DNA from: Schmidtea nova
Taxonomy: Eukaryota
Direction: 5' to 3'
Assembly (NCBI GenBank): GCA_044892505.1
Contig: CM097883.1
Span: 19,840,001-19,904,000, forward strand
DNA: 64,000 nt
Of the stretch, positions 19,792-48,886 are shown in pieces (the first letter of the stretch is position 1; each line of letters opens with the position of its first letter). A program made the translations under genes and the position numbers. The notes under the pieces were generated by a model. It searched no databases. It was not told the origin of the DNA and saw only the letters and a program-made list of their open reading frames with translations.

Positions 19792-19962
19792 NNNNNNNNN
19801 NNNNNNNNNNNNNNNNNNNNNNNNNNNNNNNNNNNNNNNNNNNNNNNNNNNNNNNNNNNNNNNNNNNNNNNNNNNNNNNNNNNNNNNNNNNNNNNNNNNN
19901 NNNNNNNNNNNNNNNNNNNNNNNNNNNNNNNNNNNNNNNNNNNNNNNNNNNNNNNNNNNNNN
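19792..19962. other. Assembly gap (N run)
   Basis: 171 N bases. Confidence 1.
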
Positions 19963-25860: not shown

Positions 25861-27006
25861 TCATATGCCATGAATGTGCCGTCAAGACCGCGTTATAAAC
25901 ACTGACCGAATTTATTAAATGTGTTGTATGTTGTGTCATATGCCATGAATGTGTCGTCAAGACCGCGTTATAAACACTATGACCGAATTTATTTAATGTG
26001 TTGTATGTTGTGTCATATGCTATGAATGTGCCGTCAAGACCGCGTTATAAACACTATGACCGAATTTATTTAATGTGTTGTATGTTGTGTCATATGCCAT
26101 GAATGTGCCGTCAAGACCGCGTTATAAACACTTTGACCGAATTTATTAGATGTGTTGTAGCAGAGGTCCCCCATTAGGTTGGATTACGGTCGTCCACCAC
26201 ATTGACTGTATTTTATGTGTTGTATGTTATGTCATATGCCATGAATGTGCCGTCAAGACCGCGTTATAAACACTATGACCGAATTTATTTAATGTGTTGT
26301 ATGTTGTGTCATATGCCATGAATGTGCCGTGAAGACCGCGTTATAAACACTATGACCGAATTTATTAAATGTGTTGTAGCAGAGGTCCCCCATTAGGTTG
26401 GATTACGGTCGTCCACCACATTGACTGTATTTAATGTGTTGTATGTTGTGTCATATGCCATGAATGTGCCGTCAAGACCGCGTTATAAACACTATGACCG
26501 AATTTATTAGATGTGTTGTAGCAGAGGTCCCCCATTAGGTTGGATTACGGTCGTCCACCACATTGACTGTATTTATTGTGTTGTATGTTGTGTCATATGC
26601 CATGAATGTGCCGTCAAGACCGCGTTATAAACACTGTGACCGAATTTATTTGTTGTGTTGTATGTTGTGTCATATGCCATGAATGTGCCGTCAAGACCGC
26701 GTTATAAACACTGTGACCGAATTTATTTGTTGTGTTGTATGTTGTGTCATATGCCATGAATATGTCGTCAAGACCGCGTTATAAACACTATGACCGAATT
26801 TATTAAAAGTGTTGTAGCAGAGGTCCCCCATTAGGTTGGATTACGGTCGTCCACCACATTGACTTTATTTAATGTGTTGTATGTTGTGTCATATGCCATG
26901 AATGTGCCGTCAAGACCCCGTTATGAACACTATGACCGAATTTATTAAATGTGTTGTAGCAGAGGTCCCCAATTAGGTTGGATTACGGTCGTCCACCACA
27001 TTGACT
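25861..27006. repeat. Two-monomer tandem array (77-bp unit A, 65-bp unit B)
   Basis: Unit starts at 25921, 25998, 26075 (A), 26152 (B), 26217, 26294 (A), 26371 (B), 26436 (A), 26513 (B), 26578, 26655, 26732 (A), 26809 (B), 26874 (A), 26951 (B). Confidence 0.95.
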
Positions 27007-28014
27007 GGCATGCTTCTAAATAAAAAATTAAGGAATAACCTCTCACTCAAACCTCATTTATTAATACAATCATTTAAATACATATAAATACAAACATCAA
27101 TTAATACAAAAAACATTTTTTAGAAATATCTGTCACAAAAAATTATAATTAATGATTAAATACATATTTTGTTGGTGTTCGTGAGTTATTGGCAAATAAA
27201 CGAAAAATTATTACTTTGGCTATATCCTCAATAGCGTCGCATGATAACATTGTAAAACCATATTGTTACCCTTTACAATATAACGCTAGTCCTGTAACAA
27301 ATTAGTGGACATCCGCAAAAAGTGAGTTTCAAGTGGGTCAAAACTATAATTGGCCAGATGTCTCTGATGGGTTTAAGGGCGACCGATTGAAGGTATAATC
27401 CTCGTTTATGTCCCTTAATTATTTAAAATATCTACACTCTCCAAGTAACACTAGTATAGAGATTTTATCGATTACTTTGTTAGGCAAGTAATGGTAAAAC
27501 ATTTCTTACTTTTATTGTCTAAACACTTTATAAATGCAAATTTCATTTTAACTACTAGTAATTTATTAATAAAAATAATGACTTGGATTTTGAATTTAAT
27601 AAAATGGAGGGTGACGAATTACGAGCTGGAGACTTATAACGTTCCAAGTGTGAAATACGATCTTTAAGGTCGCGAATGGAACAAAGAGTATGAGCAACCA
27701 AGTTGACGGAGATTGGTTCTCATCTAAAAAGAATGGACAGTTAAAATTTGGTCTCGAGTTAATGTCAGCAAAAACAGCCCCTCGAACAATTTTGGGCTTT
27801 TTAGGCTTAGGTTTGAGCTTCTGACACCATTTTAAGTATCCTCAACACAATTAAAATTTCAAAGGTTCTTAACATCATTTTTATTTAAAAAAAAACCAGA
27901 ACAAATCTGCAAATTTTTTCAAATAAAAAATATAAAAAGGAAAAACTAATCACAATTTTAAAACTAATAATCAAAATAAAGTGAAATAATAAAACAAATG
28001 CCTTTTTCATAGCT

Positions 28015-29680: not shown

Positions 29681-30626
29681 CCTACAAGAGGGATTCAAAA
29701 ATTCATTACAAAGATTAGCTTCCGAGACTTTTCATAAAAAAATACAAACCGTCCATCAACATTCAATTCGCACAAAAAAATTAAAATAAAATAAATTTTT
29801 TCATCCAATAAAATCATTATAAAATATTAAAAAAATAATTAAGGCTACTATTTAGGATTAAGTAAATATAACGATAGAAATACACACTTGATAAAGGCTG
29901 TGCCGAAATATTGTGTTATTGTTTATAAAAAAAATTTTTGATCTATAGTCATTATGAGAATTATTGATAATAATAATAAAAAAAGATCAAAGGTGAAAAA
30001 AGATAATTATGATATTTTAATTTAATGTTATGATAGAAAATTATTTTATAATTGCAAGCCCTTTCTGTTTATGTAATCAACTCTCGATGTTGTGGCGCTT
30101 TCAGCATTTTAATTAAAAAGAACATTTGTTATCCATTTGTTATGTCATTGCATCGCGTGTGGTGTCTCTTGGAAATTAATGATAAAAATAGGATCTCCAT
30201 TAGTTCGTTAAATTTTTACTAATGGAAAATCCATTAGCGATAGGGGAGTTTATTTTTCTCCCCCGGTTAAACCTCGTATCGTCAATTATCTGAGGAAAAC
30301 TGCTAAGTGGTTTTTAATTTAAATTTTCCCTTCTCACCATGAGTTAATGTGCGGGTGTGTTGTCTGAGATCAATTTTCGGATAATGGATTTTCCTTCTCT
30401 CTTGTTAGTACAATTTGGGAAGTGAGGTTTTATTTCTTCTAATTGCAGAAAAATTCAGCTGGTGTCGAATCTGCATGACTGAAATTGACTTCTAAGATTA
30501 TGTTAATTTTATTCTAATATCTACAACAATTTGATTGATTTCGCACATTCTGAGTTAAAATTAAGATATTTTCCGCTACGGGTTCATCGTAATGGATATA
30601 TTTTCACTCCTTGGTTCTATGTTTAG

Positions 30627-30815
30627 TTATCCCGGTCTGTTATCTGGCTCAATGAAACGCAATTTGCATTTGATGGGAATGGGGCTGATATCAAACGGAG
30701 TTTCCTTCGAGAGGCGGTTGCGGGTCTCCTTGAGATCCACGTAAAACTCCCCCGCCCCTCCTGAACTACTTGTTGCTTGAGCAGTTGGTGCTGGAGTTGT
30801 TGATGCTGCTGCCAT
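30627..30815 (-). pseudogene. Start of a possible second structural/capsid ORF (MAAASTTPAP...GGAG), decayed downstream
   Basis: ATG overlaps the end of the 30766 ORF. Stop-interrupted protein-like frames continue toward about 30200. Confidence 0.35.
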
Positions 30816-32534
30816 CGCATTTAATGTTTCTGTAATTGTATGTATGCTTATGAACTTCGTTATTATATACAGTTAGATGATCATTTACAACAGGCGAATG
30901 ATCATGAACTACGACATCATCTCGATTTTCAACGGTCTTATATATCTTTTTTTCATAAGCGACCATGTCGGATGTATATGCAGCACTCCATAACCCACGA
31001 GTAGGAGATTTGTCATGATTAAATTGTCTTAGATAATTTAAAACTCTCCCTCGTTGTAATGTTTTATAAAAATTACTTTGATGGTAATCCTCGTGTTTAA
31101 TCTTATGAATGAATTTATCAAATTTGTCATGTAATTGTTCTGTGGTTTGAAAACCTTTTTTTATTGGTACATTTCTTTTAGTTCTTTCTAAAGTTAGGTC
31201 TTCGTCTTCACCTGGATCTATATGGTCGTGATTTATTAATTTAAACATGCGGTGTTCCGCTAAGCCTTCTAAACTTTCTAACTGCCTCATGGTATTACCT
31301 ATAGCTTGCTGTATCCTCTTAACAGGAGCCAGATCAGGTCTTCTTTGAAAAAAATAAGCATATAGCCATTCGTTACCCTCCATTATAGCCGGTAGATTTT
31401 TATACCACTTCCACCAACCGTGTTTTATTATTTCTTCATCTGTATATTTATCTTTTTTGCGACTATAGGAGAAATATCATTAAGAGGGGTCATATCCATC
31501 CATCGTTTAAGTATGTCATCTGCGTATTTGTGATATTTTGGAGATATATTGATATATTTATCAAGATCTTTATGTTCATCTAAATATCTTGAATCGAGTG
31601 TGTAACGGTGTTGTTTATTATAAGAAAATATTTCTCGCAAATCTACTTTTTTGTATAATTCTTCTATTTTAAAAACATCTATCAGGTCATCTGAATTAAC
31701 ATAATCAAAAAATGCCTTTTCATCCTTAGTATAGTCAAACATAAATTCTCTGGTACTATTATACCTACCAGTCTTCATATTTTGTAAAAGTGTCATAAAG
31801 ACATCACTTATTGTTTGGCCAATAACGTCACCTTTTTTAATTGGTATCTTCCGTAAAGCTCGTAATTGCGGTCTAACATAATTACGTAATGCATAGTCTA
31901 AAGTTTTACTGTTAAATTTCCAGTTCATACCCATTGGATTAAATATATCAGATCGTAACGACTTTAAACTATTGCTCATTAACAGAGAATGATATGGGTT
32001 TGAACGTAATTTATTTTCGAGGTTCCGTAAACCTTTCGAGATAGTTGGTTTAATAGTAGTACTGTATATCTTATACATAAATGTTAATGCATCATAATAC
32101 CAGGTATCATTTAGTTTTTTAATATCCCGACCGCTACTTAAAAATTTTACGATAGACGTTGAATATTCAAGATTTTGTACATAATTTTTCATTGACTTGC
32201 GTTCTTCCGGAGAAAGTATTACACTGTTTATTAATCATAATTTACTTTCAATAACATTTTTTAATTCAAATACGAAAATAATTAGATTACCAACTAGTTC
32301 TTCATGTGTAGTTTTACCCCTCATATATCTGATGTTCATTATCAAATCTTTATCACTGTGATATCGGGCAGTTCTGTCTGTAGTATTACCGTAGACAATG
32401 TCATGTTTCAGACATTGTTCGTCTATTTTATTTATAGAGATCGAAAATTTGCGAGGAATTTTGTTTTTATCAAGCCTGATATCTGTCCTAGTTCCAGGAC
32501 CACGCAAATGAAATTCGCCTTTAAATTTAGTCAT
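30766..32534 (-). pseudogene. Probable single viral structural gene (about 590 aa) with an N-terminal parvovirus-VP1-like PLA2 domain
   Basis: HLRGPGT..RL...INKIDEQCLKHDIVY...RYHSDKDL is the GPG/HDxxY PLA2 signature. 32235-32534 is in frame with 31428-32192 across one TGA. The 30766 ORF frame is open back to an A-run near 31460, suggesting a frameshift. Confidence 0.7.
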
Positions 32535-32568
32535 AATTATTATTTAAATTCAAAATTTAAATCACTAA

Positions 32569-32571
<3 letters not shown>

Positions 32572-32624
<53 letters not shown>
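32572..32624. repeat. (AT)n microsatellite in the viral intergenic region
   Basis: Direct reading of the sequence. Confidence 0.95.
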
Positions 32625-32627
<3 letters not shown>

Positions 32628-32702
32628 TTAATAATTTAAATTTATAATTTATATAGCAACTTAATCACTATATAAGTAAGATTGACTTAAAATCATTTCA
32701 TT

Positions 32703-33155
32703 ATGATTGCTGAAGTTGAAAGTACTGTATCGTTACTTGAAGTCGAAGCCCACACCCGAGCTTTAAAAGAATATAATTTATTATTAATTGGTCCACGCAG
32801 TTTATTACTCAAGAAGTTAATTAAAGTAATAACACCATTAGATCAATTTGAATGCAGCCCATGGATAACAAGGAATCCTCAAAATTTTTGGAGGGAACTT
32901 CAAGTACGTTATTTAATTCTGTAATAATTTTATGTTTTGTAGTATCTAGAAACACTCGTAAGCGACCTCGAAATATGTCCACCACTGCGAATGCTAAACG
33001 ACAACGAACCAAAAAAGATATTCCATCAAGTCCAAACGAAACATCTCCCAATGTGCCAACAGGACAGATGCACAGTGTGCATTGTTCTCCGCAACTCACT
33101 TCGGTGTCTACAACAGATGAGCCAAGGGCCAACATTATCAAACTCCGAGAAATGA
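32703..33155 (+). CDS. Spliced 137-aa accessory ORF (exons 32703-32903 and 32943-33155)
   Basis: 39-nt phase-0 intron GTACGT...TTTGTAG. Exon 2 is open for 70 codons with H..CxxxxCxxC. Its TGA overlaps the Rep ATG (ATGA at 33152-33155). Confidence 0.6.
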
Positions 33156-34111
33156 AAACTGACCAATTGGTTGGTAAAATTAATTCAAGTTCTACTTCCG
33201 CAGTGGGAGATGCAAGCAACAATCCAGGCACTAATATCTTTAGAAAGCGATACTACCTATGGAGTTTTAGTCTCGGAATCCAATATTTTAGAGAACACGA
33301 GCAACTTTTTAGAAGCTTATGGAGCAATGATAAGATATCCCGATTCTTTAGTTGCCAGGAAGAGCTTGGGGATTCTGGTTTCCGGCATCTGCAGTGTATG
33401 CTCGAAACTGCGGCTGTCCGAGCGCAATTCCATATACCTTTTGTTAAATGGCATCCGGCTAATGAACGCTCGATCGTCCATGAGTATGTCACAAAACTCG
33501 AATCCCGCGTCCCAAATGGATTATCAATCCTATATGGAGAGCCGGGTAAGAAAATTGATAATAATAATAATTTTAAGACTGCATTGCTTCTCGATAATTA
33601 TAACGAAGCCCTAAATTTGATAAAAGATAAAGAAGCATTCCACTATATAACCAAACAAAAAGTTATAATAGAGACACTTTTAAATGAATACGGCAAGCCT
33701 ACAGTTGGTAATTTTGATAGTTTTACTGTCGATCCAGTTAATGTTTACGATGAGCACTCTCACATTTTTCTTGGTCCGTCTGGCATTGGCAAAACCAACT
33801 TTGCTCTAAATCATTTCAGAGTTCCAGTACACGTGAAACACTTACAAATGCTTGGTCGAGTTAGTGCCGTTCCAGATAAATGCGATGGGATCGTCTTCGA
33901 TGACCTTTATTTTAATAAATTCAGCGCATCAGAATTCATTGGTTTGGTAGATCTCGCATTTGAGAATTGCATCAATATTAAATACTCAGTTGCCATTATA
34001 CCCAAATGTTGTCCCAGAATCTTTTGTATCAATACCCTTGACAATTTTTTCCCAGATAATATTTCCCCAGAAATAACACATTCATCGTCGTATCAAAATA
34101 CACCATTATAA
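33152..34111 (+). CDS. rep: Rolling-circle replication initiator (HUH endonuclease plus SF3 helicase), CRESS-type
   Basis: Motif I (WSFSL), II (RHLQ), III (YVTK), Walker A GPSGIGKT, Walker B IVFDD, motif C IFCIN. The Arg-finger IHRR continues in another frame after about 34078 (frameshift). The track ORF starts at 32852, but the likely start is ATG 33152. Confidence 0.92.
   Translation: MKTDQLVGKINSSSTSAVGDASNNPGTNIFRKRYYLWSFSLGIQYFREHEQLFRSLWSNDKISRFFSCQEELGDSGFRHLQCMLETAAVRAQFHIPFVKWHPANERSIVHEYVTKLESRVPNGLSILYGEPGKKIDNNNNFKTALLLDNYNEALNLIKDKEAFHYITKQKVIIETLLNEYGKPTVGNFDSFTVDPVNVYDEHSHIFLGPSGIGKTNFALNHFRVPVHVKHLQMLGRVSAVPDKCDGIVFDDLYFNKFSASEFIGLVDLAFENCINIKYSVAIIPKCCPRIFCINTLDNFFPDNISPEITHSSSYQNTPL
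33171..33614 (+). CDS. ORF overprinted on the Rep endonuclease domain
   Basis: 147 open codons in an alternative frame, the same frame as the spliced upstream ORF and separated from it only by TGA 33153-33155. Confidence 0.45.
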   Translation: MVKLIQVLLPQWEMQATIQALISLESDTTYGVLVSESNILENTSNFLEAYGAMIRYPDSLVARKSLGILVSGICSVCSKLRLSERNSIYLLLNGIRLMNARSSMSMSQNSNPASQMDYQSYMESRVRKLIIIIILRLHCFSIIITKP

Positions 34112-34617
34112 AGAAAAATTATTTGAGACATATTTCTGATAACGAAGTAAACATATCATCAAATGTTAATGTATTTATCTTTTATAGGCGATCGAGAACC
34201 CGTATCTGAATGCGAATCAGATATTCAGAACTTTCCTAGAAGACGAGCAAACAGAAGCTTCAGTACAATTTCCTGCCGATATTGTGGCCGACAACTTAGA
34301 CTTTTTCTAGGAATCTGCGATTTAGATTGTTAATATTGTTAAGTTAATATAACTCTGTTAAGTTAAATTGCCTTGTAATGTTATAATTAAATAAATATTA
34401 TTGAAATAATATTGATTTATTTTAAGTTAGTAAAACATTTTATATTAAGTAAGCTACATTAACTTAAATGCATTTTGGGTAAGTAATTATAACTTACTCA
34501 TAATATAAAGTTATAGATAAGTAACATCATATAATTAAAGTCGAAGACTGTCCTCGGCTGGGTTTCAGTACACTTGGGTGAGGGGTGGGGGGGGGGCGAA
34601 GCCTAGAGGGTTTCTAT

Positions 34618-34659
34618 GCACGCCCATGGGCGTGCTATATAGTGAGCCAGGGCTCACTA
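34618..34659. other. Two adjacent palindromes (possible terminal hairpin arms or origin)
   Basis: GCACGCCCATGGGCGTGC is a perfect 18-bp palindrome; TAGTGAGCC-AG-GGCTCACTA is a 9-bp stem. A G-run precedes them. Confidence 0.7.
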
Positions 34660-36456
34660 ATGAAATATTTTCTATAACATTCGAGCATTTCTCGTATCTA
34701 TTGGACAGTTTCCTATGAAATGGTTTACGCTACTACTGATTCCTGCTGGGGATAGTTATTTATGTTTAGGACTTATAAGTAAGGTTCAAAAACTGCCGAG
34801 GCTGGCTAATCATTTATGTTAAGGTTCCAAACGATGATATATTAAATTATCAACCGGGGAACTACTGGCGTCGCATTATTCCGACATTCTTTACTTGCTG
34901 ATTTTATTTTTCACATTCTGCCATTCGATAGTTTCGCCATCCGCCCCACGCTCGAAACGTGAAACTGATGGTCGAACTATCGGAAAGGCGACGACCGTTG
35001 AGGCCGTCCTGACTCTCGAGGGATAGCACTAAAAACCCCATTTTCAAATTGAAAATATTAGTAAAGCAAAAACAAAATTTTTATGCATGAATACATTTAT
35101 TTAACTAGAAAAAAATTACTTACAAATTTATTCTTCCACAGGAATTTTAATATAACAAGTGATGATACGTTGATGATAGTATTACACAAAACGCTGTCAA
35201 AAGTGTTGTTGTAAAAGATTAAATGTTCTCAAGATAATAATAATGCTACTAAAATTGATGTAAAAAACTGCTCAAACGAAATTTTTTTTGAAAATTACAA
35301 GCTGCCTTCCGACTGATTGAGCGCCCCTTTTATAGAATTTCTGCTGCTTAACTATTGGCCTATGTTTTTTTTGTTCCGGAATTTATGTTAATTATTTCTT
35401 TTATTTCCTGATTATTTCCAATTAATTAATTAAATTCTTATTTTTATTTCCTTTTTCCAGCTTTATCTCGATTCAGGGTATTTCTCATTTCTATTTCCAC
35501 TTATTATCCTACTTTTTGACATATTGATCAATCAAAAAGGGTTGAATTTATATTAATCAATTAAAGATGAGAAAATTTCATTATAATGAACTTTAATAGT
35601 AATTTATTTGAAAAAATCGCAACAATGAAAATAAAAAAAAGTTTTACACTAAATTGTTTTTATTTAAGTAAGAATAGCAAAGAAATTTTTTATTAAAATT
35701 AACTATATAGAAGTATTAAATAAAAAAAACTAATCCAAAAAAACATTTAACTAAAAAAAACATTAATTTATATATCAATGTGTTGGGCCAAACAAGTTAC
35801 ATAAAAACCAACATAAATTTATAAATAATGAAATAAAGAACAATAAAGTACCATAGATGAGCAGAAATCATTGAGACCTGAAATAAATGACAACAATGAA
35901 TCAGCAATGAATAATATAAAACTTACGTAACATCCATTGAACCGAAGCGAGATAAATGAGCAGTGAGTGAGGGGATCGCACGGGCGACACTTGAAAATAC
36001 ACTGACAATCTAAAATAATCAAAATTGTCAGAAATATAACGCATCAATTATCACAGAAACTCACCGGGTTAACAACATAATAGCAATCATTAAAAAACAA
36101 ACATGATAAATTCACAAGCAAAAACTGGAAACTACTATATAAGCAATAGTTAAATCAGTTGAAGATATACCTTTTTTCACCATGTGATTTGTAGTGAACA
36201 TTTCTGTAACTTCTGAACTGTAACCAGAGAAATAAAAGGTATGTTAGTTATGTGTTTTACTCGTTTATTGTTTAAACCCTCATATGTTTGGATGCACTAA
36301 ATGAAATAATGTAACGTCCCGACGGTCTGTGGACCCGACGGGCGAAAATGTGCCTCGGCTCAACACCTTCTAGGTGGTGGCTGATGCGGCGTAGGAGCGC
36401 TAACTTTCGGGGGTGGGGTTATACATAGAGTCATCCAGAGTAACACCGTTGACATA

Positions 36457-37556
36457 TTTGGCGTGTCTGAAAAGTAATGAGACTCCCCTTACCCCACTTA
36501 CAAGACAGACAGTTTGCAGTAATGCAATTTATTTTCATACAACATAGTATCCCTTGACTCGAATGACATCTTTAAAATGGGTATACAATCGTTCCCGCTC
36601 AATGCGTCTGAACAGCTGCAACGATTCCTTCTGAACCTCTTCTTTGGAGTGGAAGTCCCTCTTTCTGATGTCTTTTTTCAGGTGGTTGAACAACCAGCAA
36701 TCACGTTGATTCAAGTCTGGACTGTAAGCTGACTGACAGATCAGCTTGACCTGCCTTTGTTCAAAGAATTCCCTGGTGTGTACAGATGCATGAGGACGCG
36801 CATTGTCATGTTGCCACCAGAGCTGGTTAAGTCGTGTTGGAGAAGAAATCAAAGTCCTCCATTTTTCACCAGTATCATGGACAAACTCAGTGTATCGGTG
36901 AGAGGTCACTGTTTCACCAGATGGGACAGCATAAATATTGCACTTGCCATCTCCAGTGAATGTGAGAACAAGCATTGTCTTCTGATTTGTCAACTTTGGG
37001 AGGACAACTCGAGGTCTAGGAAGGTGAGGAGGAAGCCACGCATGGTTTTTCTCTTTTGTCTGTAGCCCTTTGAAGAGTACCCAGGTCTCATCCTGCGTGG
37101 CTCAGTAGCGAAGACAATCATCCATTGAGTTCTGATCCATAAACTTCACAATTGATTTGGCACAATCCACTCTGTCCTTCTTGTTGGCACCTGAGAGGAA
37201 ACTGGGAACCCATACTGAGCAAAGTTTCTTTCGTCCCAAATGATCCACCAGGATTTTACTTGCAGAATCTTTCGAGCAACCAACAGATTCTGATATTCGT
37301 CCACGTTGTTGTTCAATAAACGCATATGCACGAAAGTGCTCTTTGTTCAGCTTCTTTTGTGCAGTCGTTGCACTAAGACAAAGTATGCTACGAATCATGC
37401 CTTATATAGGGTCACACACGCATGTGTGTGAGTAGCCACCTGATTTAGTATAAAGTCTTGTGATTCGTTTAACGCAGTACCAATGCATAGCTAGCAGTTG
37501 TATATGTGTGTGTGTGTGTGGCATACGAAATCTCAATACTTTTCAGACACGCCAAA
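36457..37556 (-). mobile_element. Mariner (DD34D) element, defective
   Basis: 28-bp TIRs (TTTGGCGTGTCTGAAAAGTA.TGAGA.T, 2 mismatches) flanked by TA. A single frame 37398-36535 has WVP, TQDETW, HDNARPH and YSPDL with 34 residues between D2 and D3. One TGA at 37102-37104 and an N-terminal deletion. Confidence 0.95.
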
Positions 37557-38052
37557 TAAATGAACCTAGTAGTCCAAGTTCTCAGATCGGATAACTGTAA
37601 TCCACACAAAGAGTCATAGGTTTTAGCACCTTAGATCCGTTAACACTGAGGATACATGAGCAACATGATTTTCCAATGAGCTTACATTGACTTGCATAAA
37701 TCTTCAATATTTGGTAGAAGATAGCTTTTGATAGATTTCTTAGTAGTATTTAAAAAAAAACTAATTTACGTTGTTTACTCATGCTGGTATTTATTTAAAT
37801 TAATAAATAAGTTAAAAGTAATAACTATTATTTATTAATTTAAATACATACCATCATGTGTAAACTACGTAAATTAGATTTTTTTTAAAAATACTTGCTC
37901 TAATGCTGAGGAAAGCTATCTGTAGTGCCTTAGATTATAAATTTCTCTTTTTTAATTAATTAATTTATTAAATAATTATTGAATGGAAGATTTAAATGGC
38001 TTTGTTTTAATATTTAGTTTTTTATTCCACTTTTTTTTCAAATAAATTCAAC

Positions 38053-38397: not shown

Positions 38398-38957
38398 TAT
38401 TTTCATCATCCTTCTTTCAAATTGATTGTATTCCTACACTAGCCGTCAACAAAAGCTTTAAACAAAAGCTTTAAAACTTTAAACTTCGAACGAATGCTGG
38501 AACCGTTATTTCTTTAATTTCTCACAAAGTCTATAGTAATTTAATAAAATAAAAGTATTTATTTTTAACTATAAACTAAACTAAGATATTAATGCTTATA
38601 GATATATTTTTACTTTTCAATACTTGTATATATATATATGTTTTAGAACGATTTATATAGTATTAATTCAAACAATCTAGGCTATGTTAAATTGAGTTAG
38701 TTAGAAGACGTAGTAGAGCTCGAGAGAGTCTAACAATATAAGTGTACAGACACTCGGGGTGTATGCTGTGTAATGCTTTTGTTTGAATGGAGGTACAAAT
38801 AAAATAATATTCAATCAAATAAAATTATTTAATAAAATTTTATTTAGATAATATAGCATCAACAAATTAATATTTACTTTTAAAATTTCGTTATTAAATT
38901 CTTTCGAATCTTCTCTTGCGTTTCTTTAGAACTTTGAAATTTCTTTAATGTCTCAAT

Positions 38958-39254
38958 ATTAAATTCGTTATCAAATTCGTTATCAAATTCGTTATCAAAT
39001 TCGTTATTAAATTCGTTATTAAATTCGTTATTAAATTCGTTATTAAATTCGTTATTAAATTCGTTATTAAATTCGTTATTAAATTCGTTATTAAATTCGT
39101 TATTAAATTCGTTATTAAATTCGTTATTAAATTCGTTATTAAATTCGTTATTAAATTCGTTATTAAATTCGTTATTAAATTCGTTATTAAATTCGTTATT
39201 AAATTCGTTATTAAATTCGTTATTAAATTCGTTATTAAATTCGTTATTAAATTC
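38958..39254. repeat. 12-bp tandem repeat (AAATTCGTTATT)n
   Basis: About 24 near-perfect copies. Confidence 0.95.
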
Positions 39255-39269
39255 TTCGTTATTCTTTAA

Positions 39270-41312
39270 TTTGATAATGTTTGATAATGTTTTTCGTTTG
39301 ATAATGTCTTAATAATGTTTGATAATGTTTCTCGTTTGATAATGTTTGATAATGTTTCTCGTTTGATAAAGTTTCTCATTTCTCGTTTGATAATGTTTTG
39401 ATAATGTTTGATAATGTTTCTCGTTTGATAAAGTTTCTCGTTTCTCGTTTGATAATGTTTGATAAAGTCTCTCGTTTCTCGTTTGATAATGTTTGATAAT
39501 GTTTCTCGTTTGATAAAGTTTCTCGTTTGATAATGTTTTCATAATGTTTGATAATGTTTTCATAATGTTTGATAATGTTTCTCGTTTGATAATGTTAGAT
39601 AATGTTTGATAATGTTTCTCGTTTGATAAAGTTTCTCATTTCTCGTTTGATAATGTTTTGATAATGTTTGATAATGTTTTCATAATGTTTGATAATGTTT
39701 CTCGTTTGATAATGTTTGATAATGTTTCTCGTTTGATAAAGTTTCTCGTTTGATAATGTTTTGATAATGTTTGATAATGTTTCTCGTTTGATAAAGTTTC
39801 TCGTTTCTCGTTTGATAATGTTTGATAATGTTTCTCGTTTGATAAAGTTTCTCGTTTCTCGTTTGATAATGTTTTGATAATGTTTGATAATGTTTCTCGT
39901 TTGATAAAGTTTCTCATTTCTCGTTTGATAATGTTTTGATAATGTTTGATAATGTTTCTCGTTTGATAAAGTTTCTCATTTCTCGTTTGATAATGTTTTG
40001 ATAATGTTTGATAATGTTTCTCGTTTGATAAAGTTTCTCGTTTCTCGTTTGATAATGTTTGATAATGTTTCTCGTTTGATAAAGTTTCTCGTTTCTCGTT
40101 TGATAATGTTTTGATAATGTTTGATAATGTTTCTCGTTTGATAAAGTTTCTCGTTTCTCGTTTGATAATGTTTGATAAAGTCTCTCGTTTCTCGTTTGAT
40201 AATGTTTGATAATGTTTCTCGTTTGATAAAGTTTCTCGTTTGATAATGTTTTCATAATGTTTGATAATGTTTTCATAATGTTTGATAATGTTTCTCGTTT
40301 GATAATGTTAGATAATGTTTGATAATGTTTCTCGTTTGATAAAGTTTCTCATTTCTCGTTTGATAATGTTTTGATAATGTTTGATAATGTTTTCATAATG
40401 TTTGATAATGTTTCTCGTTTGATAATGTTTGATAATGTTTGATAATGTTTCTCGTTTGATAAAGTTTCTCGTTTGATAATGTTTTGATAATGTTTGATAA
40501 TGTTTCTCGTTTGATAAAGTTTCTCGTTTCTCGTTTGATAATGTTTGATAATGTTTCTCGTTTGATAAAGTTTCTCGTTTCTCGTTTGATAATGTTTTGA
40601 TAATGTTTGATAATGTTTCTCGTTTGATAAAGTTTCTCGTTTCTCGTTTGATAATGTTTGATAATGTTTCTCGTTTGATAAAGTTTCTCGTTTGATAATG
40701 TTTTGATAATGTTTGATAATGTTTCTCGTTTGATAAAGTTTCTCGTTTCTCGTTTGATAATGTTTGATAAAGTCTCTCGTTTCTCGTTTGATAATGTTTG
40801 ATAATGTTTCTCGTTTGATAAAGTTTCTCGTTTGATAATGTTTTCATAATTTTTGATAATGTTTCTCGTTTGATAATGTTAGATAATGTTTGATAATGTT
40901 TCTCGTTTGATAAAGTTTCTCATTTCTCGTTTGATAATGTTTTGATAATGTTTGATAATGTTTTCATAATGTTTGATAATGTTTCTCGTTTGATAATGTT
41001 TGATAATGTTTCTCGTTTGATAAAGTTTCTCGTTTGATAATGTTTTCATAATGTTTGATAATGTTTCTCGTTTGATAATGTTTGATAATGTTTCTCGTTT
41101 GATAAAGTTTCTCATTTCTCGTTTGATAATGTTTTGATAATGTTTGATAATGTTTCTCGTTTGATAAAGTTTCTCGTTTCTCGTTTGATAATGTTTGATA
41201 ATGTTTCTCGTTTGATAAAGTTTCTCGTTTCTCGTTTGATAATGTTTGATAATGTTTCTCGTTTGATAAAGTTTCTCTTTTCTCGTTTCTTATTTCTTGT
41301 TTGATAATATGC
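39270..41312. repeat. Modular satellite built from TTTGATAATG, TTTGATAAAG and TTTCTCG words
   Basis: 2 kb composed almost entirely of these 7-11-bp words; a higher-order duplication with about 713-bp offset is visible. Confidence 0.95.
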
Positions 41313-42799: not shown

Positions 42800-43667
42800 C
42801 TACAAGGAAAAGAATAAGACGATTTTATCGGTAATTACGTGGATAGCGCCGGCTCTTTCCCTCTCTCTGGGGGCCCTAATAAATCAATTCAATCCGGTTT
42901 TCCCCCAGTAATGCTCTAATTCGTTCTCCACTCATCATTCAATTTCACCCATTCAAGACAGAGAAATTTCTAACTACACATATATTTATTGAGCATTACA
43001 CCCATATACAAATCTATCACAAGTCAGCGAGTCTTTACCAGAAATCTAAGATATCCTGGTCACAACTCCGGTCGTCCCATCCGTGCGCATTTGGTTGGTA
43101 GAATTCCGGACACGGAATTCAGCACAGGGTGTCACGATACATGAAGATCTCGTTCAGTCGGTTGTACTTCTCATTTCGTAGTGAATTCATATCCTGATTT
43201 CCTGGAGCATTTGAGTAGGGACGAAATTCGCCGGTACGTCTACATTGCGGCTGATCTAGCAGCACGTATCCAATCTGCTTTAGCCTCTGGGTTGATAGGT
43301 GATTGAATGCGAGCAACCATTGAGGGGTGGCTTGTGTAATGTTCTGTGGACACCCGTTTGAATACAAAATTCTGACATAAATAGATGTTTATGAGTGTTT
43401 TATGTACCTCTGAAATTGTGTGAATCGGAGTTGTAAAAAGGTTGTTAGATATGTGAAAATTTTATTATTTGGTTATTTTATTGTACATTGTTTAGGATTA
43501 TGTGAATTGGGGTTGTAGAAAGAATTATTAAATATGTAAAAATTTTATTATTTGGATATTTTATTGTGCATTGTTTAAAAGAGTTTGTTAAGCGGTTAAC
43601 CCGCGCACAAATTAATAGAAATAAATATTTAAAAGAAATTTCTTAAAATTTCTTACTAATTGATCAA

Positions 43668-44768
43668 ATGATTTTCATTATGATAAAATTAATATATATT
43701 TTTGAATTTATCCACAGTATCTTTACAAACAAATTGTTGCAAGTCGATATTAGACTGACAGACATCGCCAGGAATATTGAATCTGTTAATGCTACGGCAA
43801 CTTATAATGTTGAATTTGTCAATATGAAGTGGAAAATAAACGTTTTTTATTACAAATACTTTCTAGATGTCAGACCATTGAAAGTTTCTGCTAACGGTAA
43901 ATGTTTGGAAGTGCCTATCAATTCCTATGGATACATCCCTACGGAGTCCAAGGAATCAATGTTGGGATATTTCCGCATCAATGATAAATATGGAATCAGC
44001 AGATTAGTTGAATCGCATGATAAGCGCTATCAACCGATTTACATCGCTAACGTGCCAGTGATTATTCTGCCTGAAATCACAGAAATAGTCGCCTTAGAAA
44101 TGAAGGGATTTATGGAACTATCTAAAACTTTAAAACTAAATAATTTTAATAAACATTGCTATGCCAAAGTTGTTATTGTGCTCTACTTTTATGTCAATCT
44201 TAGTGATAACATTGAATTTGTTACTGAGAGAGAGAAATTTATAAAGATCGAAATATGTGTACAGAATATACTTCTCCGTTTAAACTTGATATTTAATCAA
44301 CTCCCGTGGGAAATAAGGATCGAGTTCTCGGTAGATAACTTGCCTATTTTGACTCCAAAAATGTGCTTGAGTGACTTTAAAGGTCCCCGTTATCCGGTTT
44401 CAGTGAATAGTTATGGCAATTTGAGTTTAAGTGCCCGGGAATTGCTCGAACTTTTTAAAAGTGATTCTTCTAGTAGATGTTTTAAGTTGGAAGGCCAAAT
44501 GCCGTTCACCGGTATGGTTTTAAGGTTGAATGCTACTTTCTATAGATCTTTGACAATGATCGTCCAACATTATTACATCGACATTATTTTCGGATTGTTT
44601 GTATTCATTGTCTGTACAATGTGCATTTTTGAAGGTTCTTATATGATGAACTTATTAGTCTCAAGAAAATTACGATTTTATTGTCAATTGATGTCCTATC
44701 AAAATCCGAAAGTGAATGTAGTTAGAGTATGTACTGTACTATCAAATCCATGTGTGTATCATTTTTAA
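43668..44768 (+). CDS. Unknown 366-aa protein with a two-fold internal repeat and a hydrophobic TM-like segment
   Basis: W.I...P.K....V.(I/V)NSYG occurs twice. Hydrophobic segment YYIDIIFGLFVFIVCTMCIF. The ATG lies inside the left TIR. Confidence 0.65.
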   Translation: MIFIMIKLIYIFEFIHSIFTNKLLQVDIRLTDIARNIESVNATATYNVEFVNMKWKINVFYYKYFLDVRPLKVSANGKCLEVPINSYGYIPTESKESMLGYFRINDKYGISRLVESHDKRYQPIYIANVPVIILPEITEIVALEMKGFMELSKTLKLNNFNKHCYAKVVIVLYFYVNLSDNIEFVTEREKFIKIEICVQNILLRLNLIFNQLPWEIRIEFSVDNLPILTPKMCLSDFKGPRYPVSVNSYGNLSLSARELLELFKSDSSSRCFKLEGQMPFTGMVLRLNATFYRSLTMIVQHYYIDIIFGLFVFIVCTMCIFEGSYMMNLLVSRKLRFYCQLMSYQNPKVNVVRVCTVLSNPCVYHF

Positions 44769-44996
44769 ATGGTTATTCAATCTTATGAGATCCTCCTTGG
44801 GTCATTACCCGATGGTTTCGATAGAGCTTTGGTTCGACCCGGAATCCTCCTTTCCCTGTTATCCGACAAAACTAAAGTATATTCATATTTTTTTGTAAAT
44901 TTATGTAAATTAATCAGCGAGGGAACAAAAATAAAATTGATGAATCGGCAACCACGCCAAAAATCTGCATACCTTGGTGTGGTTTCCGGTTCATCA
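44573..44996 (+). repeat. LTR or LTR-part; 419-bp direct repeat with 47364-47782
   Basis: Two substitutions noticed between the copies. Internal TGATGAAC (44644) and terminal GTTCATCA (44996) form 8-bp inverted termini. AATAAA at 44930. The second copy lacks the final CATCA. Confidence 0.85.
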
Positions 44997-46409
44997 AATT
45001 GGTGTCAGAAGTTACTCCCTCCCTCCAGTAACATTTATATTATCCTAAATAACACTTTATTTTATTCTATTCCCACATTTATTATTTTTCCTATTCCTTC
45101 CCAAATGGAGGCGCTACAATCCTGGGCGGGACTAACTGAATTGAAGGTACATGGAAACCACATCATAAGAACAACCGGGTTTTTAAACATTAAGAGGAAA
45201 CAAGTATCACACAAGTTCCTCTTCCGGTGTCTTAACAAGACTTCCGGATGGCAACCTCTGTGTCCGACGAAGTCACATTTGTCCTCAATGTCTTCATTGC
45301 TCCTAGCAATTGGCGTCCCAAGGGAAACACACCGCCACTTCTTTGTCAAGAAGTCCCAATCGGCGACACATACCCCAGTCATCACCACCTATTTCAACAT
45401 TATTCCCCGTTTGACTGGAGGAATGCAAACCGATGAGGCTAACGCAGACTGTGAAATCAGTCACATACAACCGCCAACACAACAAACAACACCAGTTATT
45501 ACCCCAATACCGTTTTTCCTAGACGGCGTTGGCTCCCCACAAACGTGGTTCCTGGCACTAGAAGTGACTCCAACCTTTCTACCCACTCAATCTCAAGGGC
45601 AGAAGTTTGGTGCACTCTTGTCCATGCTTCCAAGCACGATTTACACCACATTGTCCACCGCCATTGCAACTGCAGCCACGGCAAGTGAGCCCTACAACTC
45701 ACTGAAATCTGCAGTGCTAGACGCTTACCGACCAAAATTAGATCATTTATATGAGGCTTGGTTCCGAAATCAACCTCTCAATAATGAAAGACCAAGCGCC
45801 TTCCTCAAGCGAGCCAAGGAACAACTCGAGAGGATCCAGGCCGGTCTTACCAAAGACGACGCTCTACTCCGTAGGTTCTTTCTAAAAGCACTACCTACAT
45901 CAGCACAGTCCATTCTGGCCGTTGTTCCAAACACAACATTGGAAGAACTAGCCAAAATTGCCGACAAGATCGTGGAAATCAACACGTCACCTGTTACTCC
46001 ATCACCGGTAGTCGCAACAACAAGCCTCCCACACGCCGAATTAGGAGCACTAGTCAGCGCCATAGCTGCTTTAACATCGAGGATGGACAATTTAGACGCA
46101 AGTCTACACACCCGAGGTCGAAGTCGAACAGACAGTCGTGACAACAATCAAAAACGACATCGGTCCACATCTGCACGAGGGCTCATATGCTCCTACCATA
46201 AGACGTACGGAGACAAAGCCCAACATTGCTATGTCGGTTGTAGGTGGAACAACCGACTTCCAACATGCCTGCCTCGCAACCTTTGCATCTATCACGCAAT
46301 ATTTAAGACCGAGGCCAAAACATGCTTGGAAGGCTGCCGTTTCCATACTGGTAATCACAATACCAGTAACGTTAATCAAAATTCGTATAATAAGCCTTCG
46401 GAAAACTGA
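44769..46409 (+). CDS. gag: Gypsy gag (CsRn1-like CHCC type) with a long upstream in-frame extension
   Basis: P.F...P..WF..LE ... PY..LK..L ... RPS.FL ... LR..FL..LP ... LA..AD pattern. Two C-x2-H-x9-C-x3-C motifs. Confidence 0.88.
   Translation: MVIQSYEILLGSLPDGFDRALVRPGILLSLLSDKTKVYSYFFVNLCKLISEGTKIKLMNRQPRQKSAYLGVVSGSSNWCQKLLPPSSNIYIILNNTLFYSIPTFIIFPIPSQMEALQSWAGLTELKVHGNHIIRTTGFLNIKRKQVSHKFLFRCLNKTSGWQPLCPTKSHLSSMSSLLLAIGVPRETHRHFFVKKSQSATHTPVITTYFNIIPRLTGGMQTDEANADCEISHIQPPTQQTTPVITPIPFFLDGVGSPQTWFLALEVTPTFLPTQSQGQKFGALLSMLPSTIYTTLSTAIATAATASEPYNSLKSAVLDAYRPKLDHLYEAWFRNQPLNNERPSAFLKRAKEQLERIQAGLTKDDALLRRFFLKALPTSAQSILAVVPNTTLEELAKIADKIVEINTSPVTPSPVVATTSLPHAELGALVSAIAALTSRMDNLDASLHTRGRSRTDSRDNNQKRHRSTSARGLICSYHKTYGDKAQHCYVGCRWNNRLPTCLPRNLCIYHAIFKTEAKTCLEGCRFHTGNHNTSNVNQNSYNKPSEN
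45000..45012 (+). promoter_or_regulatory. Primer-binding site, tRNA-Leu-like
   Basis: TGGTGTCAGAAGT 3 nt after the LTR end, complementary to a 3' end ACUUCUGACACCA as recalled for tRNA-Leu(CAA). Confidence 0.8.
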
Positions 46410-47363
46410 AAACGCCATCGAACTCCCCCACAGTTTTTGATGGCGATCCCATAACCTGTGGACTCTTTTCTGTTCCCGCCGTACCTCATTCCCAGAACTC
46501 TAACGAAGTCGATGCCCCCATTCACTTCGTTATCGATAGCGGTTCCATCATCTCATTCCTACCTAATCGGTTCGGAACTGATAATAATCAAAAAAGGTCC
46601 TTCCGGACAGCCAGTGGCGAAAACTTTTCCACTATTGGAACAAAAAACTTAATATTCCAAATTCCTGGTCTGTCCAAAACTTTTTCATGGACATTCCAAG
46701 TCGCCGAGGTGATTCATCCACTCTTAGGTGCCGATTTTCTTGATGCTGAAGGTTTACTCCCTGATTGCAGAGAACGCAAATTAATCCTCTCACAACACAC
46801 ACCTAGAGCTCAAGTTCTTGACCACCTCTGTAGTGACGCCCTCAATCTCTTACCCGCCACACCTTGCTATATACAACAATTACTAAAGACGTTCCCAAAC
46901 GTCGAAAAGAGATCAAACAATCACAAACAAACCCTCTCTTTTCTACACGTCATAGTCACCAATAACGGTATGCCTAACAGAGAACGTATGCGACCACTCG
47001 CGCCCGAGAAGCTCACACTTGTCAAGGAAGAATTCAATAAGCTACTCGAAGCCGGTACTATACACCGATCGAATTCCCCTTGGGCATCACCCATCCATGT
47101 GGTTACAAAAAAAGACGGATCTATCCGCGCCTGTGGTGACTACAGACGCCTCAACAAAGTCACTATACATGACTCTTACCCCATGCCACTTATATCAGAC
47201 GTTCTTTCGAGATTACCTGAAGCTACAATCTTCTCCACTCTAGATCTAAAAAAGGCTTACCACCAAATCCCGGTAGCACCAGAAGACATCCCGAAGACCG
47301 CTGTTATCACCCCTTTTGGCTTGTTTGAATACAAATACATGCCATTCGGTCTCCGAAACGCAG
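46390..47363 (+). pseudogene. pol: Gypsy pol, truncated (aspartic protease plus N-terminal half of RT)
   Basis: In the -1 frame relative to gag: FVIDSGS, LLGADFL, SPWASP, DYRRLN, LDLKKAYHQIP, MPFGLRNA. It then joins the LTR repeat at 47364; no YxDD, RNase H or integrase. Confidence 0.92.
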
Positions 47364-48886
47364 TTACATCGACATTATTTTCGGATTGTTTGTATTCATT
47401 GTCTGGACAATGTGCATTTTTGAAGGTTCTTATATGATGAACTTATTAGTCTCAAGAAAATTACGATTTTATTGTCAATTGATGTCCTATCAAAATCCGA
47501 AAGTGAATGTAGTTAGAGTATGTACTGTACTATCAAATCCATGTGTGTATCATTTTTACATGGTTATTCAATCTTATGAGATCCTCCTTGGGTCATTACC
47601 CGATGGTTTCGATAGAGCTTTGGTTCGACCCGGAATCCTCCTTTCCCTGTTATCCGACAAAACTAAAGTATATTCATATTTTTTTGTAAATTTATGTAAA
47701 TTAATCAGCGAGGGAACAAAAATAAAATTGATGAATCGGCAACCACGCCAAAAATCTGCATACCTTGGTGTGGTTTCCGGTTTTAATTTTATCATAATGA
47801 AAATCATTTGATCAATTAGTAATAAATTTTAAGAAATTTCTTTTAAATATTTATTTCTATTAATTTGTGCGCGGGTTAACCGCTTAACAAACTCTTTTAA
47901 ACAATGCACAATAAAATATCCAAATAATAAAATTTTTACATATTTAATAATTCTTTCTACAACCCCAATTCACATAATCCTAAACAATGTACAATAAAAT
48001 AACCAAATAATAAAATTTTCACATATCTAACAACCTTTTTACAACTCCGATTCACACAATTTCAGAGGTACATAAAACACTCATAAACATCTATTTATGT
48101 CAGAATTTTGTATTCAAACGGGTGTCCACAGAACATTACAGCTTGCTCATTTTCAAATTGTATAAACCACTTCGCAGACGTTTCCGTGATTGCTCCTTGC
48201 GGCATTGGCCAAGAGAGGTCTCCTTCCCACCGCACTCGTAGTTGGAACAACAATGTGGTATCACGTACCGATGGATTAACGTGACTCCGCATCCATGCTC
48301 GTAGGTGTCGTTCTGCTGCATTCTTGATACTTATCGGGATAGTTTACGAATTTATGAATTTCATCTCCTTGTCAGAGCGACGCCTCCGCGGGACTTTATC
48401 CTGGTGCATTTTCTGAATAAAGGGTGGAAGAATTAAAGACGGGGTCGGGTAACTCTCGCATCATTTCATCATGCATCTCTCAAACCTCATCATACCTTGT
48501 CGCTCTCAATTCACATCATACATCATACAATCGACATAAATGATCATTACCTGAACGCGTTTATTCGAATTTTTGTTCATCTTCATTCAGTGGCGGACTG
48601 GCTACTTATTCTCAGGGTTGCTGATGTACCTCAGGGGCCCGTAATTGCATGCAGGGTCACGAATTCTTTCTAAACAAATTTTACCTCTATGTTAAATTTA
48701 CGTGAAAAATGACTTTTGTGCACACTATGGTAGTTACACACCAACATTGTAATATCATTTGATTACCCATTAAAAAGAAAATGATTAGATAGGCTACTTA
48801 TTAAATATTACAGCTCATTTAACACCAGAAAACAACACGTACAGTATGTGGAGCAAGTAACAGGCAGAAATAAACAGGAGAAAATG

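What the first reader, a model, noticed from the sequence alone, without database searches (positions are those of the whole stretch)
30200..34670. Endogenous hybrid ssDNA virus: CRESS-type Rep back-to-back with a PLA2-bearing structural gene
Seen: a complete HUH+SF3 Rep on plus and a divergent gene beginning with a GPG...HDxxY...D phospholipase A2 motif on minus. Known: PLA2 is a hallmark of parvovirus VP1 and adintovirus PLA2X, not of typical CRESS viruses. The combination recalls parvo-like hybrid viruses (PHV/NIH-CQV), whose natural hosts are poorly established. Inference: germline integration here would link an unusual virus lineage to an animal host.
Basis: partly seen in the sequence, partly recalled or inferred. 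Interest (0 to 1): 0.85.

Follow-up and report, generated by a model that had tools for sequence, protein, structure and literature searches.

The report
Endogenous ssDNA virus with PLA2-like gene
A slightly decayed copy of a small single-stranded-DNA virus sits in a repeat-rich, animal-like stretch of genome; it pairs a circovirus-type replication gene with an otherwise unrecognisable gene that begins with a phospholipase-A2-like domain, a pairing known so far only from the 'parvo-like hybrid' viruses (family Oomyviridae).

Summary
On the + strand, 32852-34111 encodes a CRESS-type Rep: an HUH endonuclease plus an SF3 helicase. It has seven distant relatives (best E 1e-13, 31% identity), and a profile of the family matches the solved circovirus Rep at E 3e-21. 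It is not "complete": the open frame lacks the arginine finger that all seven relatives carry.

On the - strand, 30623-32534 holds four open stretches of 99, 254, 205 and 62 codons. The first matches Pfam Phospholip_A2_4 at E 5.8e-5, which is 0.2 bits under the curated cut-off, and the Gly-x-Gly, His-Asp and Asp positions are present. The remaining ~540 residues match nothing: 0 hits in 1.84 billion representative proteins, Pfam or PDB. "Structural gene" and "parvo-like" are therefore not shown.

The surroundings are transposon remnants and satellites of an AT-rich eukaryote, probably an animal, with no assembly gap near the junctions. The few breaks point to a young insertion.

Most likely (about 0.6) this is one endogenous copy of an unsampled cressdnavirus lineage. 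CRESS Rep plus PLA2 is already a recognised architecture (Oomyviridae, predicted stramenopile hosts), but kinship to that family could not be tested. Linkage of the gene pair elsewhere was not tested, because fetching the relatives' genomes was referred.

The parts
30196..34659 (.). Proposed extent of the endogenous viral element (about 4.46 kb)
   Evidence: All coding signal lies within 30623-34111. Paired small hairpins lie at both proposed ends. A host repeat ends at 30044 on the left. The limits are inferred, not proven.
32852..34111 (+). Rep gene (419-codon open frame as it stands); one probable frameshift, so the frame lacks the arginine finger
   Evidence: tblastn of 11 relatives gives a single frame with outer bounds 33251-34060.
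32852..33250 (+). N-terminal extension of Rep (about 133 residues, basic and Ser/Thr-rich), absent from all relatives
   Evidence: In alignment A1 the relatives start where the endonuclease starts. An open frame of this length is not expected by chance in 32% GC DNA.
33251..33541 (+). HUH endonuclease domain of Rep (motifs I-III; His179, Tyr212, Lys215)
   Evidence: Invariant columns in A1. The profile of A1 matches solved Rep nuclease domains 7lar, 5xor, 2hw0, 6h8o and 1l2m.
33737..34048 (+). SF3 helicase domain of Rep (Walker A 308-315, Walker B 350-351, motif C Asn394)
   Evidence: Invariant columns in A1; pairwise alignment.
32535..32851 (.). Divergent intergenic region with a (TA)n microsatellite, TATA-like boxes and an upstream + strand ATG at 32703
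30623..32534 (-). Second gene cassette: four consecutive open stretches (99, 254, 205, 62 codons). Read as one gene it has one in-frame stop and two frame changes.
   Evidence: There is no homologue for the 254- and 205-codon stretches. A 37-residue motif is shared between these two stretches.
32325..32510 (-). PLA2-like domain at the N-terminus of the cassette (residues 9-70: Gly12-x-Gly14, His44-Asp45, Tyr48, Asp61/Asp63)
   Evidence: PF08398 match to residues 33-70, E 5.8e-5, 23.7 bits against a cut-off of 23.9. The residues are read.
30196..30265 (.). Left-end pair of small hairpins, the first with an 8-bp stem whose arm sequence recurs once more just after it
   Evidence: z -2.4.
34618..34659 (.). 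Right-end pair of G+C-rich hairpins
   Evidence: z -4.8; 0 of 200 shuffles fold as well.
29893..30044 (.). Neighbour: host repeat (second copy at 13831-13989), which marks host DNA on the left
36455..37558 (.). Neighbour: Tc1/mariner-like remnant (DDE_3 ORF, 28-nt inverted ends)

Best explanation
One young, slightly decayed endogenous copy of the genome of an unsampled single-stranded-DNA virus of the phylum Cressdnaviricota, inserted in a transposon- and satellite-rich region of an AT-rich eukaryotic (probably animal) chromosome. In the free virus the two cassettes would have been transcribed outward from the AT-rich intergenic region. Rep (HUH nuclease plus SF3 helicase) would nick an origin hairpin and drive rolling-circle or rolling-hairpin replication. 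The second cassette would encode a virion-associated protein whose N-terminal PLA2-like domain helps the particle leave the endosome, as in parvoviruses and oomyvirids. As it stands the copy cannot do this. Rep has one probable frameshift and lacks its arginine finger in frame. The second cassette, read as one gene, has one stop and two frame changes. Shown: the Rep identity and its motifs; the PLA2-like profile hit; the orphan nature of the rest; the chromosomal context; the low decay. Inferred: that both cassettes came from one genome; that the second cassette is structural; the role of the end hairpins; the animal host.
For: Rep. PLA2-like domain: with the Gly-x-Gly, His-Asp and Asp positions visible. 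One unit: the genes are head-to-head, 317 nt between the ORF starts and 168 nt to the first + strand ATG. Both sides carry equally few breaks. Only one stop lies in 3.1 kb of open frames, which implies roughly 1% or less neutral divergence. The total of about 4.5 kb is typical of ssDNA viruses. Eukaryote-type TATA and poly(A) signals lie in the expected places. Small hairpin pairs lie at both ends. There is a published precedent for CRESS Rep plus a PLA2-bearing capsid gene (Oomyviridae: PMC13426907, PMC12451638). Integration: a host repeat, Tc1/mariner, hAT, LINE and gag/RT remnants and satellites surround the element. The only N runs are more than 10 kb away. The element's G+C is close to that of its flanks.
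Against: The PLA2 hit is 0.2 bits below Pfam's cut-off, no homologue supports it, and the single-sequence model was unusable (pLDDT 41). No capsid-like sequence or fold was found; the 254-codon stretch is predicted mostly helical, but at pLDDT 36. GC3 differs between the sides: Rep 0.34, the other cassette 0.24-0.30. The best Rep relatives sit on contigs of about 2.0-2.2 kb, too small for a 640-residue partner gene if those contigs are complete. No second copy is in the window. No canonical origin was found: the nonanucleotide occurs no more often than chance and not in a good hairpin. The ends are not related to each other. The host lineage was not identified (searches found nothing on record).
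Confidence: 0.6

Rival explanations
1. Two independent insertions: a CRESS Rep fossil happens to lie next to an unrelated PLA2-bearing gene from another element, such as a very divergent densovirus-, bidnavirus- or adintovirus-like remnant. The region would be a graveyard where foreign DNA accumulates.
For: The region is packed with unrelated transposon remnants and satellites. GC3 differs between the two sides. The nearest Rep relatives sit on roughly 2-kb contigs. No relative with the gene pair was shown.
Against: The genes start head-to-head within 168-317 nt, with promoter-like signals between them. Both are equally little decayed. There is no hit to parvovirus NS1, capsid, PolB or integrase families anywhere near. 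No recognisable host sequence lies between the two genes.
Confidence: 0.2
2. The PLA2 likeness is spurious. The minus-strand cassette is the lineage's own unrecognisable gene set (capsid or other) without phospholipase, and the element is an ordinary, if divergent, CRESS-virus fossil.
For: The score is below the Pfam gathering cut-off and only profile positions 22-64 of 80 are matched. There is no PDB or database homologue. About 27 proteins of this window were scanned, which weakens the E-value to roughly 1e-3.
Against: The hit is the only Pfam family reported for that ORF even at E up to 10. It lies at the very N-terminus of the cassette, where viral PLA2 domains sit. The Gly-x-Gly loop, the His-Asp dyad with Tyr three residues on, and a downstream Asp are all present (motif definition from Zadori et al. 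2001, as cited in PMC11945456).
Confidence: 0.15
3. Contamination or misassembly: an exogenous virus contig was stitched into host sequence, or the whole contig is not from the nominal organism.
For: ssDNA-virus sequences, PHV in particular, are notorious reagent contaminants (PMC13141889). The window's proteins are not on record elsewhere, so no independent assembly could be checked.
Against: The sequence is continuous with no N run within 10 kb. The reading frames are broken. Composition is host-like. A (TA)n microsatellite lies inside the element. Host repeats lie directly on the left.
Confidence: 0.03
4. A non-viral Rep-encoding mobile element (Replitron- or Helitron-like transposon) carrying a passenger gene.
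For: Rep-class HUH proteins also serve as transposases (PMC10288648, abstract as listed). No capsid was recognised.
Against: The relatives carry PF02407 and sit on 1.6-5.8 kb contigs typical of CRESS viruses. The helicase is SF3, and the profile matches the circovirus Rep. Only a single copy is in the window. Replitrons are described from plants, algae and protists.
Confidence: 0.02

Closest known systems
Oomyviridae (order Lineavirales, class Arfiviricetes, phylum Cressdnaviricota): 'parvo-like hybrid virus' / NIH-CQV
   Same: A CRESS-type Rep combined with a second gene whose product carries a PLA2 domain. Genome of about 4 kb. Endogenous copies are known (PMC13426907, PMC12451638, PMC13499601).
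   Different: [quoted passage not shown] Here the 540 residues after the PLA2-like domain match nothing, no jelly-roll was detected, the ends are unrelated small hairpins of unknown meaning, and the surrounding genome looks animal-like at 32% G+C. Rep kinship to oomyvirids could not be tested.
Circovirus-type Rep and CRESS-virus fossils in animal genomes
   Same: HUH motifs I-III plus SF3 Walker A, Walker B and motif C. The profile of the family hits the solved circovirus Rep 7lar at E 3e-21, and more weakly nanovirus- and geminivirus-type Rep nuclease domains. Rep-derived endogenous elements in animal genomes are a well-known kind (PMC6069186).
   Different: The window's own Rep does not reach PF02407 or any other Pfam family. 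It has a 133-residue N-terminal extension. Its relatives' helicase halves hit no SF3 helicase family, only AAA_24 weakly. The partner gene is unlike any circovirus Cap.
Parvoviridae, especially ambisense densoviruses with split VP genes
   Same: A PLA2 domain at the N-terminus of the structural cassette, ambisense layout, 4-6 kb size and terminal hairpins. In some densoviruses the structural proteins are encoded by two ORFs, with PLA2 in one of them (PMC9896142).
   Different: The replication gene is not NS1-type. No parvovirus or densovirus capsid family or solved capsid is matched. No terminal inverted repeats were found.
Bidnaviridae and adintovirus/Polinton-like elements with PLA2-bearing proteins
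   Same: A PLA2-like domain on a virion-associated protein.
   Different: No PolB, integrase or major-capsid gene lies anywhere near. The element is only about 4.5 kb.

Membership tests
Cressdnaviricota Rep (HUH + SF3) | HUH endonuclease motifs I, II (His) and III (Tyr-x-x-Lys) | tested here: met
   His179, Tyr212 and Lys215 are invariant in alignment A1; the motif I region aligns.
Cressdnaviricota Rep (HUH + SF3) | SF3 helicase Walker A, Walker B and motif C | tested here: met
   Gly308-Thr315, Asp350-Asp351 and Asn394 are invariant.
Cressdnaviricota Rep (HUH + SF3) | Arginine finger after motif C | tested here: not met
   7/7 relatives carry the Arg-Arg pair; the window's open frame has none at those columns. 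One frameshift is the probable cause.
Cressdnaviricota Rep (HUH + SF3) | Significant similarity to recognised Rep families or structures | tested here: met
   Relatives at E 1.4e-13, four of them with PF02407. The profile matches PDB 7lar at E 3e-21. The window's sequence alone hits no Pfam family.
Cressdnaviricota genome | Origin stem-loop with a conserved nonanucleotide in the loop | tested here: inconclusive
   The canonical nonamer occurs twice near Rep, but no more than chance and not in a stable hairpin. A hairpin at 30196-30225 with a one-mismatch nonamer-like loop and a repeated arm sequence is a candidate only.
Viral PLA2 domain (Pfam PF08398) | Profile score at or above the gathering cut-off | tested here: inconclusive
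   23.7 bits against 23.9; E 5.8e-5.
Viral PLA2 domain (Pfam PF08398) | Ca-binding Gly-x-Gly loop, catalytic His-Asp, downstream Asp | tested here: met
   Gly12-x-Gly14, His44-Asp45 (Tyr48) and Asp61/Asp63 in the 99-residue ORF. The motif definition comes from the literature, not from an alignment made here.
Oomyviridae / Lineavirales | Rep clusters with oomyvirid Reps | not testable with these tools
   No named oomyvirid protein came back from any search, and no collection here lets one be fetched.
Oomyviridae / Lineavirales | PLA2-containing jelly-roll capsid protein | tested here: inconclusive
   The PLA2-like domain is borderline. No capsid similarity was found. The model was too poor to judge the fold.
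Oomyviridae / Lineavirales | Linear genome with defined termini | tested here: inconclusive
   Hairpin pairs lie at both proposed ends, but there is no terminal repeat. Fossil copies may have lost their termini.
Oomyviridae / Lineavirales | Stramenopile (oomycete) host | tested here: inconclusive
   The context is 32% G+C with LINE, hAT, Tc1/mariner and DUF7041 gag-like remnants. It looks animal-like, but the lineage was not identified.
Parvoviridae | NS1-type replication protein and parvovirus/densovirus capsid | tested here: not met
   No NS1 or parvovirus coat family hit. No solved parvovirus capsid was matched. Rep groups with PF02407-bearing proteins.
Bidnaviridae / adintovirus-Polinton | Protein-primed PolB (plus integrase and capsid genes for adintoviruses) | tested here: not met
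   No such ORF lies within or beside the element.

The most novel reading that the evidence does not exclude
An unsampled lineage of cressdnaviruses that infects, or recently infected, an animal. It would carry a PLA2-like domain on a large, non-jelly-roll, mostly helical protein with no relatives in 1.8 billion protein clusters, and may have hairpin-ended linear DNA. That would mean either a second, independent union of a CRESS Rep with a viral PLA2, or an animal-associated sister group of the Oomyviridae.
Probability: 0.3. Interest if true: 0.75.

Novelty: new variant of a known kind. Interest (0 to 1): 0.5.

Why it matters
A chromosomal copy ties a virus lineage to a host with a certainty that metagenomic reads cannot give. 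That matters for CRESS-plus-PLA2 viruses, whose database records are dominated by reagent contaminants and whose hosts are only predicted. If the two cassettes are one genome and the host is an animal, the Rep+PLA2 architecture extends beyond stramenopile-associated oomyvirids. It would also add a 540-residue protein module with no known relatives to the ssDNA-virus repertoire. If instead the two genes arrived separately, or the PLA2 hit is chance, this is one more Rep fossil among many.

Tried and rejected
The steps below led nowhere or were rejected.

**Homologue searches**
- The 205-codon stretch found nothing.
- The 254-codon stretch had 0 hits in 1.84 billion representatives.
- The PLA2 ORF had no candidate, but only proteins of 54-173 residues were eligible, so longer kin were not seen.
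- PDB sequence searches of all three stretches gave nothing significant.
- NCBIfam gave nothing, and Pfam at E up to 10 gave nothing new.

**Structure**
- Single-sequence structure predictions of the PLA2 ORF (pLDDT 41) and of the 254-codon stretch (pLDDT 36) were too poor.

**Look-ups and context**
- Exact look-ups of the Rep, of the 254-codon product and of two transposon ORFs, meant to find other assemblies or the host, were not on record.
- Cluster look-up of the Rep relatives returned no names or accessions.
- Rfam and tRNA scans gave nothing to help name the host.

**Ends and origin**
- No terminal direct or inverted repeats lie between the two flanks beyond the shuffle level.
- The canonical origin nonamer was rejected as evidence.
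- No second copy was found in the window.

**Not attempted**
- No splice model or joined reading of the cassette was attempted. No tool predicts introns here and no relatives exist to share one.

**Rejected readings**
- Parvovirus or densovirus fossil: the Rep is not NS1-type.
- Adintovirus or bidnavirus: there is no PolB.
- Replitron or Helitron: the Rep is virus-type with SF3, and the element is single copy.
Full report
**1. What is there**

The window is AT-rich (31.8% G+C) and full of repeats. Between about 30.2 and 34.7 kb lie the only long open frames of that neighbourhood.

On the + strand there is a 419-codon ORF at 32852-34111. On the - strand, starting 317 nt away and pointing the other way, there are four consecutive open stretches of 99, 254, 205 and 62 codons between 32534 and 30623. 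In 20 shuffles of the window the longest stop-free stretch was 157 codons and none reached 200. All three long stretches are therefore, or very recently were, coding.

**2. Rep**

- The 419-residue product finds seven proteins in 5.8 billion, with E-values from 1.4e-13 to 3.6e-5. Four of them carry Pfam PF02407 Viral_Rep.
- Pairwise with the best hit (P0001, 285 aa), residues 134-399 align with residues 3-261 at 31% identity, E 2e-20.
- In the eight-sequence alignment A1 the invariant columns are His179 (motif II), Tyr212 and Lys215 (motif III), Gly308-Thr315 (Walker A), Asp350-Asp351 (Walker B) and Asn394 (motif C).
- A profile of A1 matches solved Rep proteins. The circovirus-type Rep 7lar scores E 3e-21; 5xor, 8h56 and 2hw0 also match. 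Nanovirus-type (6h8o, 2hwt) and geminivirus-type (1l2m) nuclease domains match more weakly.
- The window's own sequence reaches no Pfam family and no PDB Rep by itself. The assignment therefore rests on its relatives.

Two features depart from "complete". First, all seven relatives have an Arg-Arg pair (the arginine finger) after motif C, and the window's frame has none. I take this as one probable frameshift; a second is possible but cannot be tested without closer relatives. Second, the first 133 residues (basic, Ser/Thr-rich) have no counterpart in any relative. tblastn of all 11 relatives and cluster members uses one frame only, with outer bounds 33251-34060.

**3. The other cassette**

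The 99-residue ORF hits one Pfam family only, PF08398 Phospholip_A2_4, even when E-values up to 10 are allowed. The E-value is 5.8e-5, the score is 23.7 bits against a curated cut-off of 23.9, and residues 33-70 match profile positions 22-64 of 80. With about 27 proteins of this window scanned, the corrected expectation is near 1e-3.

The ORF shows Gly12-x-Gly14, His44-Asp45 with Tyr48, and Asp61/Asp63. These are the positions that define viral PLA2 domains in the literature (Zadori et al. 2001, cited in PMC11945456). No homologue supports it (which saw only proteins of 54-173 residues). No PDB sequence matches, and the single-sequence model is unusable. I rate the domain as genuine at about 0.75.

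The remaining ~540 residues are orphans:
- The 254-codon stretch has no hit among 1.84 billion representative proteins read in full by HMMER.
- The 205-codon stretch has none either.
- Pfam, NCBIfam and PDB give nothing.
- The one model is low-confidence and mostly helical.

Nothing therefore shows a capsid, let alone a parvovirus-type one. The two large stretches share a 37-residue motif (E 0.002 for the single comparison). That is a weak sign that they belong together.

Read as one gene, the cassette has one in-frame stop and two frame changes. No large insertion was recognised, and truncation at its 3' end cannot be judged. Some ambisense densoviruses naturally encode their structural proteins in two ORFs, with the PLA2 in one of them (PMC9896142). 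The count of three breaks is therefore an upper bound.

**4. One element or two**

For one element:
- The genes are head-to-head, with a TATA-like box about 30 nt before the first + strand ATG (32703). Poly(A) signals lie after both cassettes.
- Decay is equally low on both sides. 4.8% of possible substitutions in the 3.1 kb of open frames would create a stop, yet only one stop is seen. This implies about 1% or less neutral divergence since inactivation, or else constraint.
- The total size is about 4.5 kb.
- Small hairpin pairs lie at 30196-30265 (z -2.4) and 34618-34659 (z -4.8).
- CRESS Rep plus PLA2 is a published architecture.

Against one element:
- GC3 is 0.34 for Rep and 0.24-0.30 for the other cassette.
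- The nearest Rep relatives sit on contigs of 1.6-2.2 kb, though others sit on contigs of 2.7, 3.3 and 5.8 kb, and completeness is unknown.
- There is no second copy in the window.
- The two ends show no related sequence.
- No convincing origin was found.

I put "one genome" at about 0.6-0.65.

**5. Integration and host**

The left flank (29893-30044) is a repeat with a second copy at 13831-13989. To the right lies a Tc1/mariner-like remnant at 36455-37558. Further out are:
- a gag-like DUF7041 plus RVT_1 retroelement;
- a hAT-like remnant (DUF4371, zf-C17orf113, hAT dimerisation domain);
- a LINE with RVT_1 and zf-RVT;
- a GIY-YIG ORF;
- four satellite arrays.

The only N runs are at 6906-7113 and 19792-19962 and were left untouched. 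This context argues for a true chromosomal insertion in a eukaryote whose repeat content looks animal-like, but I could not name the organism. Exact look-ups of four window proteins found nothing on record, and there is no tRNA or Rfam hit. Nothing in the window looked human.

**6. Comparison with what is known**

These viruses are now the family Oomyviridae, order Lineavirales, class Arfiviricetes, phylum Cressdnaviricota. They have linear ssDNA genomes, a PLA2-containing jelly-roll capsid protein and a CRESS-type Rep. Their likely stramenopile/oomycete hosts are inferred from endogenous copies (PMC12451638, PMC13426907, PMC13499601). Most database PHV sequences are silica-column contaminants (PMC13141889).

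Here no oomyvirid protein came back from any search. The cassette beyond PLA2 is unrelated to anything known, and the genome context does not look like an oomycete. Membership is untested, so the likeness is of plan only.

Parvoviridae, Bidnaviridae and adintoviruses fail on defining features (see the membership table).

**7. Verdict**

This is a real, young endogenous ssDNA-virus element with a CRESS-type Rep and a probable PLA2-like domain on an orphan partner cassette. It is a new variant of a known kind, and of moderate interest. Interest would rise if the pair is found linked elsewhere and the host is confirmed as an animal.

Noticed in passing
window 34180-34310 (+): A 42-codon open stretch lies just 3' of the Rep stop. 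It is acidic and has 43% G+C. Two Rep relatives (P0002, P0007) have long acidic C-terminal tails, but tblastn showed no significant similarity.
   Followed up: partly
window 32703-32924 (+): A 73-codon ORF begins at the first ATG after a TATA-like box and overlaps the start of the Rep ORF in another frame. It has no family hit.
   Followed up: partly
window 32572-32625: A (TA)n microsatellite of about 27 units sits in the middle of the divergent intergenic region of the element.
   Followed up: no
window 43415-48060: A retroelement with a DUF7041 gag-like ORF and RVT_1 fragments is flanked by two 83-bp x2 tandem arrays in inverted orientation (43415-43577 and 47898-48060).
   Followed up: no
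window 17503-18736; 25861-27007; 38957-39254; 39270-41281: There are four satellite or minisatellite arrays with units of 10/18 bp, 77/219/438 bp, 12 bp and 17/62 bp. The region resembles repeat-rich heterochromatin, where viral fossils often accumulate.
   Followed up: no
window 48890-51678 (-): A hAT-like transposase remnant is split over several ORFs (DUF4371, zf-C17orf113, hAT dimerisation domain).
   Followed up: no
window 54001-58000: There is strong negative GC skew (-0.33 to -0.38) with positive AT skew upstream of and into the LINE reverse-transcriptase ORF (57335-59320).
   Followed up: no
window 4710-5069 (+): An ORF has a weak GIY-YIG nuclease hit (E 0.001). It may be a Penelope-like element remnant.
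   Followed up: no
window 30680-30815: A G+C-rich (about 56%), Ser/Thr/Gly/Ala-rich low-complexity stretch lies near the 3' end of the minus-strand cassette and is open in two frames.
   Followed up: no
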